Shown here: one piece after another, positions 45,806-48,102 of the stretch
How the letters are laid out: each line of letters starts with the position of its first letter
How positions within the stretch are numbered: position 1 is the first letter of the stretch
Source: Octopus vulgaris
Lineage: Eukaryota
Direction of reading: 5' to 3'
Length of the DNA: 64,000 nucleotides
NCBI GenBank assembly: GCA_951406725.2
Contig: OX597815.1
Coordinates: 188,108,001 to 188,172,000, forward strand
The notes under the pieces: model-generated
What the model saw: only the letters and a program-made list of their open reading frames with translations
Databases searched by the model: none
Told to the model about the DNA's origin: nothing
Translations under genes and position numbers: made by a program

Positions 45806-46016
45806 GTGTGTGTGTGTATTTTTTGTGTGTGTCTCCTCAAAATCGCTTGACAACCGATGCTGCTGTGTTTATGTCCCCGTAACTTAGTGGTTCGGCAAAA
45901 GAGACTGATAGAATAAGTACTAAGCTTACAAAGAATAAGTCCCGGAGTCAATTTGCTCAACTAAAGGCGGTGCTCCAGCATGGCTGTAGTCAAATGACCG
46001 AAACAAGTAAAAGAGT
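45785..46016 (+). mobile_element. S1 SINE 3' half
   Basis: Family match. Confidence 0.85.
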
Positions 46017-46041
46017 AGTATATATATATATATATATACTA

Positions 46042-46089
<48 letters not shown>

Positions 46090-46719
46090 GAGGTGTATTC
46101 CGTTAAGAATGTATTAGAGTACAAAATAGAGTTCATTCACCCTTAGAATTAGCAGATAGCCAGCAGTATTATAGTATACTACCGATTCTAGGCTTAGGCA
46201 TTTCTTGTATGTGTATGTATGTATGTATGTATGGGGATGCCCAGAGATGTAGTGGCATATCTGTGTGTGAGTGATTGTAAGAGCGCACGTGTGAGTGCAT
46301 TTGCGAATAAAAAAAAATTTAGCATGTGCAGCCTAACATGTGAAACAAAGTAAACAGACAATGTACACAATGCTGCTCATGTCAAGCATGTAGAGGCGAG
46401 CTCACAGCGAGCGGATTGGAACTGTCAGCGTCTGCTAGATTCAAAAGAGCCAGTTAGATGTAACAGCATCAAAATCAAACATTTACTTATGGAAACAGTG
46501 ATTATATATATCACCTAAGGAGATACAACAGGTAAACTGTTAATTAATTCAAATTTAAATCCTATATATATATATGTGGTTCAATGCTGTATCGAAATGT
46601 GTAGTGGTTATTAAACAGCTGTCAAAACGTACTCCCTCTTCCTTTTGACTATATATATATATATATATATTTATATATGTAAGAATGGTGCTGAATGACG
46701 AATTAACAAAATTCCTTTA

Positions 46720-46802
46720 TTTTTGACATATGTTTCGAAGGCTGCATATTCCTAATTGCGAAGGAATAAGGAGTACATTATGCCGCTTTCTCATCAGGAA
46801 AA
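46720..46802 (-). ncRNA. mirror hammerhead copy with a mismatch at the first stem I pair
   Basis: Reverse complement of 46943-47025 but reads GTC-AAAAA. Confidence 0.75.
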
Positions 46803-46942
46803 GCAAGGAACTTATGTCAACATCAAAATGCACAAAAAACTTTTAGATGATTGCTCACATGGAGCCCATAGCGGTGTGGGCTCCGTGTGAGCAATCATCT
46901 AAAAGTTTTTTGTGCATTTTGATGTTGACATAAGTTCCTTGC

Positions 46943-47025
46943 TTTTCCTGATGAGAAAGCGGCATAATGTACTCCTTATTCCTTCGCAATTAGGAATATG
47001 CAGCCTTCGAAACATATGTCGAAAA
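46943..47025 (+). ncRNA. complete type I hammerhead ribozyme
   Basis: Stem I TTTTC/GAAAA; CTGATGA 46948-46954; stem II 46955-46966/46997-47008 (10 of 12 bp); GAAAC 47009-47013; palindromic ACATATGT stem III; canonical GTC, predicted cut after 47020. Confidence 0.85.
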
Positions 47026-47254
47026 TAAAGGAATTTTGTTAATTCGTCGTTCAGCTCCATTCTTACATATATTTATATTTTTTAAATAAACATACAAATT
47101 TCCACACGAAAGCACGTAAGCTATGCCCTAGACACGTAACTTCAACCGTGTTTTTTCTGATGTGAATTTTGCTACCCAGGTATCAGTTAATTCGAATTAT
47201 CCTTAATAAGATAATTCATTCAACTACTCATATATATATATATATATATATATA

Positions 47255-47570
47255 TACTAGCAGCTAAGCCCAGTTTCACCTGGTCTGTTTGGATGATGTG
47301 GCTGTGATTGTTTTCGGTTAGGCATAATCTATAACAGCATTTCTGAACTTTATCATTTCGGGTCCCGTTTCGATTGGGGCCTCCAGCTGTATGAAAATTT
47401 TCTCAGTAAGTATGGGGGCTAGGAAAAAAATACAAACTGCATTCCAATCTATGCACCTGTCTCCACATGTGTGCCATTTTTCATGCGAATCCCCCTGGCC
47501 GTTTGGCTGTGAACCTCAAGACAAGAAAGAATACAATGATCGCCCATGTCCAATTTATATTATAGATATA
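47255..47570 (+). mobile_element. Helentron/DINE-1-type element, diverged
   Basis: TACTAGCAGCTAAGCCC 5' end in (TA)n; TTTATATTATAGAT 3' end. Confidence 0.5.
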
Positions 47571-48102
47571 TACACATATACACATATATGTATATCTGAT
47601 GCCTCTCTTTCTGCCTGCCTGTTTGTTTATTTGTCTGTCTTACCCTCTCTCTCTCATATATATGTATAAGTGTGTGTGTATGGCTGTGTGACTTCGTATT
47701 TACCATTGTCTTCATGTGTATTCATTCATTGTAAGCAAAAGGCTCATCCATACAGTGCAGTTTGTTTCCACTTCTCCATGTAGCCATGTCTGAGTAGTTC
47801 ATTGCTTGACAGACTGGGTGAGTATTCCCCTACTTCAAAACAGGTGAAGGCTGGTGACAGGAAGTGCATCCAGCTGTGGAAACTTAACTACAATGTAGCA
47901 TGGATGTTGATGATATACGATAACATTCAATTATATTCTCAATTCTTCTAAGATATTTTAATTCTCAACATTTTAGATTATCACATATGATCAAAAAAGG
48001 AAAAACCAAAAATATCCTTCAAAGCTGAGGTAAATAGAAATTTCCATTAGTCATTAATCATTTCAATGCTATTTATAACTAAATGGTTTATTTTTGCCTT
48101 AA

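What the first reader, a model, noticed from the sequence alone, without database searches (positions are those of the whole stretch)
46673..47072. 400-bp palindrome containing two back-to-back hammerhead ribozymes
Seen: 198-bp arms around a 4-nt loop, embedded in (TA)n. The right arm holds a textbook HHR with all core bases, GUC, a 5-bp stem I, a long stem II with an inner ATTCCT/AGGAAT hairpin, and a palindromic ACATATGT stem III. The left arm holds its mirror on the other strand. Four of the five arm differences are left-T/right-G pairs, and three of those are in CpG context, so deamination is the simplest explanation. Inference: either strand encodes one ribozyme followed or preceded by its antisense. 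Ribozyme folding therefore competes with a 200-bp dsRNA hairpin, a likely ADAR or endo-siRNA substrate in a lineage known for heavy A-to-I editing. Which fold wins should depend on the transcribed strand, because the ribozyme arm is made second on the plus strand and first on the minus strand.
Basis: partly seen in the sequence, partly recalled or inferred. Interest (0 to 1): 0.85.

Follow-up and report, generated by a model that had tools for sequence, protein, structure and literature searches.

The report
Head-to-head Penelope retrotransposon tails with hammerheads
The 400-bp palindrome is real, but it is the ordinary footprint of a very abundant Penelope-like retrotransposon: two 5'-truncated copies inserted head to head in a (TA)n microsatellite, each carrying the family's usual hammerhead ribozyme motif.

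Summary
Arms 46667-46868 and 46877-47078 are 202 nt and 97% complementary. The right arm carries a complete type-I hammerhead (46943-47025, cut after C47020). The left arm carries its mirror, damaged at position 1.1.

The interpretation needs changing. Each arm is part of the 3' region (pseudo-LTR) of a Penelope-like element (PLE). This element has thousands of copies in this 2.8-Gb genome. [quoted passage not shown]

At least 40 other loci carry the same kind of palindrome. Every centre is different, and the two arms of one locus share private variants. In 24 of 25 pairs one copy ends near position 202 and the other near 354.

These are published PLE hallmarks: 5' truncation, an adjacent inverted copy, a "tail" at one end, AT-rich or microsatellite targets, and a hammerhead in the pseudo-LTR.

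A palindrome reads the same on both strands, so the ribozyme arm is made second on either strand. Helix III is a self-complementary ACAUAUGU, the dimer-type design, so a lone copy opposite its antisense is unlikely to cleave.

CpG deamination of the left copy is supported. This is a known kind of feature, of modest interest.

The parts
46650..46670 (.). (TA)n microsatellite on the left. It is the target-site remnant and merges with the AT-rich 3' end of the left copy.
   Evidence: Sequence. All family copies end in (TA)n.
46667..46873 (-). Left copy of the PLE pseudo-LTR piece, the 'short' form. It covers element positions about -5 to 202, with its 5' end at the palindrome centre.
   Evidence: It is 95.7% identical to a long reference copy. 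It carries three CpG G>A changes and one T>A change relative to the family consensus.
46719..46803 (-). Left hammerhead motif, degraded. N1.1 (46724) is G>A, which breaks the helix I pair next to the cut site (C17 = 46725).
   Evidence: Rfam Hammerhead_1 at 19.3 bits, E = 0.014, with the closing pair flagged. The site fails my descriptor. The mutation is polarised against the consensus.
46874..46876 (.). 3-nt junction filler (GTG) between the two 5' ends.
   Evidence: It does not match the family sequence CGCTA|TGGGCTCC. Every other palindrome has a different centre.
46877..47229 (+). Right copy of the PLE pseudo-LTR piece, the 'long' form. It covers element positions 1 to about 354 and includes the 152-nt 'tail' 47079-47229 that the left copy lacks.
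   Evidence: It is 99-100% identical to other copies over positions 1-202.
46943..47025 (+). Intact type-I hammerhead motif. Helix I 46943-47 / 47021-25; core 46948-54; long helix II 46955-47008; GAAA 47009-12; self-complementary helix III 47012-19; predicted cut between 47020 and 47021.
   Evidence: Rfam Hammerhead_1 over the full model length, 25.5 bits, E = 1.2e-4. Descriptor expectation 0.005 per window. Conservation and covariation.
47230..47256 (.). (TA)n microsatellite on the right, the target-site remnant.
   Evidence: Sequence. The same pattern is seen in other loci.

Best explanation
The palindrome is one insertion event of a Penelope-like retrotransposon (PLE) into a (TA)n microsatellite. 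The event left two copies of the element's 3' region (pseudo-LTR) joined head to head.

Shown here:
- The arm sequence lies about 510 nt downstream of the stop codon of an ORF of 833 aa or more. That ORF combines a telomerase-like RT with a C-terminal GIY-YIG nuclease.
- The family has thousands of copies, with variable 5' truncation and a common 3' end.
- Partial tandems form pseudo-LTRs.
- Many copies have an inverted 5'-truncated partner.
- The hammerhead belongs to the pseudo-LTR of every subfamily sampled.

Inferred:
- The template was a short RNA that starts at a promoter inside the pseudo-LTR. The promoter elements are CCAAT, TGACGTCA, TATAAA at -38 and an Inr TCATTA with its A at -10. 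The 5' ends of the palindrome arms cluster at -11 to +12 and never go further upstream.
- Both target strands then received cDNA. One route is two-strand nicking and priming, as the Anolis PLE protein does in vitro. The other is snap-back of the first cDNA.
- One copy starts at the RNA's 3' end (about 354). The other starts or ends at the first internal AU-rich tract (about 202-212).

In this locus the hammerhead is cargo, not a working device. It is a dimer-type, protein-assisted motif. In a read-through transcript of either strand it lies 3' of its perfect antisense, so the 200-bp hairpin forms instead. After insertion the left copy lost three CpGs by deamination. One of these hits the hammerhead at N1.1.
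For: Copy number:
- The arm gives 1995 first-look candidates; 48 matches from the 40 scored were 95-100% identical.
- The tail gives 2285 candidates and the ORF 18,030.

Element anatomy:
- Long copies share more than 1.8 kb upstream of the arm, with scattered 5' ends.
- Partial tails lie upstream of the ORF in direct orientation in L031 and L046. In L020 the tail runs straight into the ORF 5' region.

Protein:
- RT motifs FDISSFYPSI and YRDDCLL, and a GIY-YIG motif IYQ-11 residues-YIG.
- Invariant Y716, Y729, G731, R740 and H744 across 30 homologues.
- Weak Pfam GIY-YIG hits, E = 6e-4 and 3e-3.
- AlphaFold model pLDDT 73; nine of the ten best PDB fold matches are telomerase RTs, E from 5e-9.

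Palindromes:
- All 40 scored centre candidates are palindromic.
- 21 of 21 fetched have arm 5' ends between -11 and +12, and 20 of 21 pair a short with a long copy.
- All centres differ.
- Arms of one locus share private variants. L067 has 29 shared variants against 3 arm-to-arm differences.
- The short+long pairing occurs in 24 of 25 pairs, P = 1e-7 against independent choice.

Other:
- Promoter motifs are conserved in diverged subfamilies.
- Hammerhead evidence.
- Fold energies and arm order.

Literature:
- PLE insertions show 5' truncation, pseudo-LTRs, an adjacent inverted 5'-truncated copy, a one-sided tail, a microsatellite bias and a hammerhead in the pseudo-LTR (PMC8557442).
- Hammerheads on opposite strands 100-700 bp apart, and the dimer-type design with no monomer activity (PMC4209133).
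- A PLE protein that nicks and extends both strands in AT-rich DNA, starts RT at two internal sites and assists the hammerhead (PMC11167929).
Against: - Pfam RVT_1 is not hit and the GIY-YIG hits are below Pfam's gathering score. A sequence search of PDB finds nothing. The RT and EN assignment therefore rests on motifs and on a fold match with modest TM-scores (0.3-0.4).
- The transcription start at -10 is inferred from motifs and from where the copies end. No RNA data were available.
- The 'tail' here is about 150 nt. Published PLE tails are 30-40 nt.
- No empty site was recovered, because both flanks are other repeats. Insertion as a single event is inferred from arm similarity and family behaviour, not seen directly.
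- Gene conversion between arms could also keep them alike.
Confidence: 0.85

Rival explanations
1. The palindrome is itself the mobile unit. It would be a non-autonomous, foldback-like or retrozyme-like element copied as a whole by the PLE machinery.
For: The build is stereotyped: a short arm plus a long arm, recurring in at least 21 loci and in diverged subfamilies. pLTR-derived non-autonomous elements (animal retrozymes) have been proposed (bioRxiv 10.64898/2026.07.22.740005).
Against: - Every centre differs in length and sequence.
- Arms pair by locus through shared private variants, and head-to-head pairs also occur with junctions far upstream in the element, in L006, L022, L035 and L047.
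- Each arm starts downstream of the TATA box, so the unit has no promoter of its own.
- A 200-bp perfect hairpin RNA is a poor RT template.
- Retrozymes are direct tandems, not inverted pairs.
Confidence: 0.07
2. The palindrome is an assembly or sequencing artefact, an inverted duplication made by chimeric fold-back reads.
For: PLE tandem and inverted structures are known to trouble assemblies (PMC8557442). No reads were available here.
Against: - The arms differ at 6 of 202 positions, in a CpG-decay pattern.
- The two copies have different 3' extents.
- At least 40 loci on many chromosomes show the same biology, with arm divergence from 0 to 12 differences that roughly tracks copy age.
- An artefact would give identical arms and no family-wide regularity.
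Confidence: 0.02
3. The locus is a host-used RNA device: a hairpin source of small RNAs or ADAR substrate, or a ribozyme whose activity is switched by the competing hairpin.
For: The predicted hairpin is very stable (-351 kcal/mol). miRNA-precursor models give sub-threshold hits simply because the sequence is a long hairpin.
Against: - The locus has no promoter of its own.
- The left hammerhead is already decaying at CpGs, which argues against purifying selection.
- It is one of very many equivalent insertions.
- The Rfam miRNA hits are far below their gathering scores (47 against 70 bits).
- Both strands give the same fold order, so no strand switch exists.
Confidence: 0.05

Closest known systems
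Penelope-like elements with C-terminal GIY-YIG endonuclease (Penelope/Poseidon, Neptune, Nematis clades): the typical insertion architecture
   Same: [quoted passage not shown]
- Heavy 5' truncation.
- Partial tandems that form pseudo-LTRs.
- An inverted 5'-truncated copy abutting the 5' end.
- An extension present at one end only.
- Insertion into AT-rich or microsatellite DNA.
- A hammerhead in the pseudo-LTR, and a promoter in the pseudo-LTR.
Sources: PMC8557442, PMC11167929.
   Different: - The one-sided 'tail' is about 150 nt, against 30-40 nt in published families.
- The ORF has a roughly 130-aa N/S-rich low-complexity insert where homologues carry the CX2-5CxxC linker.
- The clade was not determined by phylogeny.
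- The window copy has no ORF at all. It consists only of two pseudo-LTR pieces.
PLE hammerheads / metazoan type-I hammerheads (Cervera & De la Pena 2014; Rfam RF00163)
   Same: - Type-I topology with a complete core (CUGANGA...GAAA...UH).
- A short 5-bp helix I and a larger-than-usual helix II.
- A tiny helix III with a palindromic sequence, implying action as a dimer.
- Pairs on opposite strands 100-700 bp apart were already seen in Schistosoma.
   Different: - Helix II is very long (54 nt, a 12-bp imperfect stem plus a variable distal hairpin). The Rfam score therefore falls below gathering (25.5 against 34 bits).
- There is no unpaired nucleotide between A9 and G10.1.
- Helix III is an 8-nt palindrome, not the zero-length 'min-HHR'.
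Animal non-LTR retrozymes (tandem hammerhead repeats giving circRNAs)
   Same: They are derived from PLE pseudo-LTR sequence and carry dimer-type type-I hammerheads (bioRxiv 10.64898/2026.07.22.740005).
   Different: Retrozymes are head-to-tail tandems, so two sense ribozymes can pair and excise a unit. Here the copies are head to head, so a transcript holds one sense and one antisense copy and cannot form the dimer.
LINE-1 twin priming (5' inversions)
   Same: A second priming event on the other target strand gives an inverted segment joined by microhomology.
   Different: Twin priming yields non-overlapping inverted and direct segments of one copy. Here both arms cover the same 200 nt, as two full cDNAs of the same RNA end, giving a true palindrome.

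Membership tests
Penelope-like element (family-level test on full-length relatives of the arm) | Reverse transcriptase most closely related to telomerase RT | tested here: met
   AlphaFold model of the 833-aa ORF: pLDDT 73, RT region above 90. Nine of the ten best Foldseek PDB matches are telomerase RTs (ranks 1-8 and 10), E 5e-9 to 1e-7, ahead of most retron, DRT and group II RTs; rank 9 is a DRT2 RT. RT motifs A and C are visible. Pfam RVT_1 is not hit. No phylogeny was made.
Penelope-like element | GIY-YIG endonuclease in the same ORF (C-terminal in canonical EN+ clades) | tested here: met
   IYQ-(11 residues)-YIG at residues 715-731. Invariant Y716, Y729, G731, R740 and H744, and near-invariant E799 and N812, in 30 homologues. 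The model shows a beta-beta-alpha-alpha-beta-alpha unit at 714-805 with pLDDT around 90. Pfam PF01541 hits are weak: 20.6 and 18.3 bits against a cutoff of 22.6.
Penelope-like element | 5' truncation, and partial tandems that form pseudo-LTRs | tested here: met
   5' ends are scattered from -94 to beyond -1400 with a common 3' end. The tail sequence lies directly upstream of the ORF in L020, L031 and L046.
Penelope-like element | An inverted 5'-truncated copy adjacent to the 5' end | tested here: met
   Seen in the window, in L006/7, L014, L022, L025, L026, L035, L037 and L047, and in 20 further palindromes.
Penelope-like element | [quoted passage not shown] | tested here: met
   24 of 25 head-to-head pairs have positions 203-354 on one copy only, P = 1e-7. 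The length, about 150 nt, is larger than the published 30-40 nt.
Penelope-like element | Hammerhead motif in the pseudo-LTR | tested here: met
   The motif lies 497-653 nt into 3' flanks cut about 35 nt upstream of the ORF end in 15 of 20 diverged copies, and in all near copies.
Penelope-like element | The window's own copy encodes the RT-EN protein (autonomous copy) | tested here: not met
   tblastn of the 833-aa ORF against the window finds nothing. Only the two pseudo-LTR pieces are present.
Hammerhead ribozyme, type I (Rfam RF00163) | Conserved catalytic core C3 U4 G5 A6 N7 G8 A9 ... G12 A13 A14 ... U16.1 H17 | tested here: met
   The core is invariant in 30 aligned copies, apart from N7 (U/A), H17 (C/A/U) and a few decayed copies.
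Hammerhead ribozyme, type I (Rfam RF00163) | Helices I, II and III supported by pairing and covariation | tested here: inconclusive
   87.9% of cells are paired, against 35-48% when partners are slid. Three pairs show changes on both sides (U-A>C-G in helix I; G-C>A-U and U-A>A-U in helix II). The covariation score was reached by 3 of 500 shuffles. The sequences are closely related, so statistical power is low.
Hammerhead ribozyme, type I (Rfam RF00163) | Score at or above Rfam's gathering threshold | tested here: not met
   25.5 bits (right arm) and 19.3 bits (left arm) against 34. The alignment covers the full model with a 50-nt insert in helix II. There was no hit in the wider scans.
Hammerhead ribozyme, type I (Rfam RF00163) | Self-cleavage at the predicted site | not testable with these tools
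   This needs in vitro transcription. The monomer ribozyme fold is 9.4 kcal/mol above the MFE. Published single PLE hammerheads were inactive alone (PMC4209133, PMC11167929).
Animal non-LTR retrozyme | Head-to-tail tandem of hammerhead-bearing units, allowing dimeric cleavage and circularisation | tested here: not met
   The two copies are inverted, not tandem. Each transcript holds one sense and one antisense motif.
miRNA precursor (Rfam mir-3003, MIR172 sub-threshold hits) | Score above gathering, and sequence conserved beyond a generic hairpin | tested here: not met
   47 and 34 bits against a gathering score of 70. The matches require 39-60-nt inserts and occur on both strands, as any long palindrome would give.

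The most novel reading that the evidence does not exclude
In this genome a short RNA that starts at the promoter inside the PLE pseudo-LTR may be retrotransposed on its own. The insertion chemistry (two-strand priming or cDNA snap-back) may then routinely turn it into a stereotyped 0.55-kb near-perfect inverted repeat, with one arm ending at about 202 and the other at about 354. Hundreds of such palindromes would be in vivo evidence for the both-strand extension so far seen only in vitro for an Anolis PLE. They would also seed long-dsRNA (ADAR or siRNA substrate) loci across a cephalopod-like genome wherever they are read through.
Probability: 0.3. Interest if true: 0.5.

Novelty: new member of a known kind. 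Interest (0 to 1): 0.27.

Why it matters
For genome annotation, this locus and hundreds like it should be masked as Penelope-like element fragments. They should not be reported as ribozyme genes, miRNA hairpins or structural curiosities.

For PLE biology, the family offers a large natural sample of insertion junctions:
- 5' ends pile up at a predicted pseudo-LTR start site.
- Short and long 3' ends are almost always paired in inverted insertions.
- The one-sided tail is unusually long.

These data bear on the still unsettled PLE integration mechanism. They agree with the in vitro finding that a PLE protein nicks and extends both DNA strands and starts reverse transcription at two sites.

For ribozyme searches, this is a conserved type-I hammerhead with a 54-nt helix II that standard Rfam thresholds miss.

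Tried and rejected
- Rfam at gathering threshold over the whole window, and at E <= 10 over 751 nt, gave no hammerhead. The family appeared only when about 110 nt were searched alone.
- Pfam on the ORFs and on 30 homologues gave no RVT_1 hit and only sub-threshold GIY-YIG hits.
- Sequence and profile searches of PDB found nothing useful. The fold search was needed instead.
- I looked for a paralogous empty site through the two flanks. Both flanks are other repeat families that themselves end at TA-rich DNA, so no clean empty site was obtained.
- I considered APOBEC-like cDNA editing for the three G>A changes and rejected it. The only shared context is CpG, not TC or CC.
- I considered a second ribozyme or hammerhead cleavage as the cause of the common 5' end and rejected it. 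The cut site is at element position 144/145, while the 5' ends cluster at -11 to +12.

Full report
**1. The observation**

The palindrome is real. The repeat finder reports arms 46667-46868 and 46877-47078, 202 nt long and 97% complementary, with 8 nt between them.

The right arm holds a complete type-I hammerhead. Helix I is UUUUC/GAAAA (46943-47 with 47021-25). The core CUGAUGA is at 46948-54. Helix II is 54 nt (46955-47008). GAAA is at 47009-12, helix III ACAUAUGU at 47012-19, and C17 at 47020.

A simple descriptor (core, G10.1-C11.1 plus two pairs, U16.1-H17, at least 4 bp in helix I) hits only this site in the window. It hits 0.005 times per simulated 64-kb window.

Rfam found nothing at gathering threshold, and nothing hammerhead-like when 751 nt were scanned. 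When 111 nt were scanned alone, Hammerhead_1 (type I) aligned over its full length at 46942-47026. The score was 25.5 bits and E = 1.2e-4, below the gathering score of 34, with a 50-nt insertion in helix II. The mirror motif on the minus strand (46719-46803) scores 19.3 bits, and its helix-I closing pair is flagged as broken.

**2. The arm is a piece of a very abundant element**

The window comes from a 2.8-Gb assembly of 227 contigs. The 202-nt arm has 1995 first-look candidates there. The 40 that were scored gave 48 matches, 95-100% identical. The 150 nt to the right of the palindrome (47079-47228) are just as repeated, with 2285 candidates.

I aligned the flanks of 28 copies. The repeat continues upstream of arm position 1 in many of them, and downstream to about position 354, where a (TA)n run begins. 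Long copies share more than 1.8 kb upstream, with 5' ends scattered from -94 to beyond -1400, and they share a common 3' end. This is the pattern of a 5'-truncating retroelement.

**3. The element is a Penelope-like element (PLE)**

About 510 nt upstream of arm position 1, an ORF ends. A 302-aa piece of it has 18,030 first-look candidates in the genome, with open frames up to 896 aa.

An 833-aa frame (L046) shows RT motifs (FDISSFYPSI, YRDDCLL) and a C-terminal IYQ-11 residues-YIG motif. Its homologues are proteins of about 700 aa from metagenomes and invertebrates. The best named one is from the cephalopod Argonauta hians. In an alignment of 30 of them, Y716, Y729, G731, R740 and H744 are invariant, and the consensus carries a CxC...CxxC linker before the GIY-YIG motif.

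Pfam gives only sub-threshold GIY-YIG hits and no RVT_1. Sequence searches of PDB find nothing.

An AlphaFold model (pLDDT 73, RT region above 90) matches telomerase reverse transcriptases best. Ranks 1-8 and 10 are TERTs, with E from 5e-9 to 1e-7. A TERT-like RT fused to a GIY-YIG nuclease defines PLEs (PMC8557442, PMC11167929).

The structural hallmarks are present too:
- Tail sequence lies directly upstream of the ORF in L031 and L046, and in L020 the tail runs straight into the ORF 5' region. These are pseudo-LTRs formed by partial tandems.
- Inverted 5'-truncated copies abut the 5' end in L035, L037, L047, L006, L022 and others.

The window itself holds no ORF, only the two pseudo-LTR pieces.

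**4. The palindrome is a recurrent, independently made insertion product**

I searched the genome with the 100 nt around the centre. This gave 903 first-look candidates, and all 40 that were scored were palindromic.

I fetched twenty of them. Together with the window, all 21 have both 5' ends between -11 and +12. In 20 of the 21, one copy ends at about 202-218 and the other at about 354 or beyond.

Every centre is different in length and sequence, and none extends beyond -11. The two arms of one locus share private variants. L067 has 29 shared non-consensus positions against 3 arm-to-arm differences, and L051 has 10 against 2. Both arms were therefore copied from one template at each event.

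Adding pairs with other junction positions (L006/7, L022, L025, L008 with its partner), 24 of 25 pairs combine a short and a long copy. Among single copies both 3' ends are common (8 short, 14 long). The pairing is non-random, P = 1e-7.

This matches the published description of PLE insertions: an inverted 5'-truncated copy at the 5' end and a "tail" at one end only (PMC8557442). It also matches the in vitro behaviour of an Anolis PLE protein. That protein nicks and extends both strands of AT-rich DNA and starts reverse transcription at two internal sites, the stretch between them being the tail (PMC11167929). Here the one-sided stretch is about 150 nt, against the published 30-40 nt.

Both 3' ends are AU-rich and merge into (TA)n.

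**5. Why the 5' ends coincide (inference)**

Upstream of arm position 1, long copies carry CCAAT, TGACGTCA, TATAAA at -38 to -33, and TCATTA with its A at -10. These motifs recur in subfamilies only 62-72% identical in protein. In Penelope and Chlamys the pseudo-LTR holds the transcription start (PMC8557442).

I infer that the palindromes derive from a short RNA starting at about -10. cDNA synthesis ran to that RNA's 5' end on both sides. The mechanism was either two target-primed events or snap-back of the first cDNA, ending at the first TA-rich microhomology near position 202.

Each arm lacks the TATA box, so the palindrome has no promoter of its own. The hammerhead cut site (144/145) does not coincide with any common copy end.

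**6. The hammerhead is a genuine family feature**

In 15 of 20 diverged copies, the motif lies 497-653 nt into 3' flanks that were cut about 35 nt upstream of the ORF end.
- The core reads CUGA[U/A]GA, so it varies only at the free position N7. GAAA is conserved, and H17 is C, A or U.
- Helix I shows U-A to C-G. Helix II shows G-C to A-U and U-A to A-U.
- 87.9% of cells pair, against 35-48% when the partners are slid. Statistical power is low because the copies are closely related.
- Helix III variants (ACAUGUGU, ACAUGU) stay self-complementary.

This is the dimer-type design of metazoan and PLE hammerheads. Single copies of such hammerheads were inactive in vitro, and hammerheads on opposite strands 100-700 bp apart were already noted in Schistosoma (PMC4209133). 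The Anolis PLE hammerhead cleaved only with the element's protein and was not needed for insertion (PMC11167929).

**7. Folding**

- The 89-nt monomer prefers a non-ribozyme fold. The MFE is -19.9 kcal/mol, against -10.5 for the ribozyme-compatible fold. A GCUUUUC/GAAAGC hairpin buries the CUGAUGA box.
- The whole palindrome folds as one hairpin of -351 kcal/mol (plus strand) or -333 kcal/mol (minus strand).
- In both transcripts the antisense box is at index 124 and CUGAUGA at index 281. A palindrome reads the same on both strands, so the ribozyme arm is always synthesised second.

**8. Arm differences**

Against a consensus of 25 near copies, the left copy has G>A at element positions 9, 145 and 173, all at CpG, and T>A at position 180. 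The right copy has none of these. Both arms share an A at position 189.

CpG deamination after insertion is the simplest reading. The change at position 145 (window 46724) is N1.1 of the left hammerhead.

**9. Surroundings**

Both flanks are other repeat families that end at TA-rich DNA, so no empty site could be reconstructed. A fold-back read artefact is unlikely given the arm differences, the asymmetric extents and the family-wide regularity.

**10. Verdict**

This is a known kind of feature: a PLE pseudo-LTR inverted insertion with PLE hammerheads. It is one of hundreds in this genome.

The parts of modest new interest are the strict short/long pairing, the long one-sided tail, the clustering of 5' ends at a predicted start site, and a hammerhead whose 54-nt helix II escapes standard Rfam thresholds.

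The dsRNA / ADAR idea remains an untested possible by-product.

Noticed in passing
L048-L067, L006/7, L022, L025, L033 (family-wide); window 47079-47229: In head-to-head pairs of this PLE family, one copy ends at about 202-212 and the other at about 354 in 24 of 25 cases (P = 1e-7). Both 3' ends are common among single copies. The 152-nt stretch behaves like the PLE 'tail' but is about four times longer than published tails.
   Followed up: partly
Long copies, element positions -70 to -1 (e.g. L017:1431-1500; L068-L087): A conserved promoter-like block lies just upstream of the point where the short and inverted copies begin. It contains CCAAT, TGACGTCA/GGCGTCA, TATAAA and an Inr TCATTA. The predicted transcription start is near -10.
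   Followed up: partly
window 46380-46650: The left flank is an old repeat (72-80% identity, 265 first-look candidates). In paralogues it continues past the insertion point as ...CCTTTTGACT|CTATTTAT... The window's copy has a (TA)n run there.
   Followed up: partly
window 47257-47560: The right flank is another abundant repeat (1753 first-look candidates, up to 96% identity). Its copies start with CTAGCAGYTAAGCCC directly after a (TA)n run, so several element families seem to pile up at TA microsatellites.
   Followed up: partly
L046:3238-5739 (-), residues 578-705 of the 833-aa ORF: A roughly 130-aa asparagine/serine-rich low-complexity insert (pLDDT below 50) sits between the RT and the GIY-YIG domain, where homologues carry a CX2-5CxxC zinc-finger-like linker.
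   Followed up: no
window 46941-46961: A competing hairpin GCUUUUC/GAAAGC encloses the CUGAUGA box in the monomer's minimum-energy fold. The helix-I 5' strand can pair with the start of helix II in the subfamilies I inspected by eye.
   Followed up: no
window 46000-47700: The region is dense in (TA)n, (TC)n and (TG)n microsatellites (46016-46086, 46204-46232, 47559-47681), which produce most of the short inverted and direct repeat calls around the palindrome.
   Followed up: no
L079, L083 (diverged subfamily copies): An 8-nt deletion removes the distal hairpin of helix II while the core and the proximal stem are kept. This suggests that the distal part of the long helix II is dispensable.
   Followed up: no
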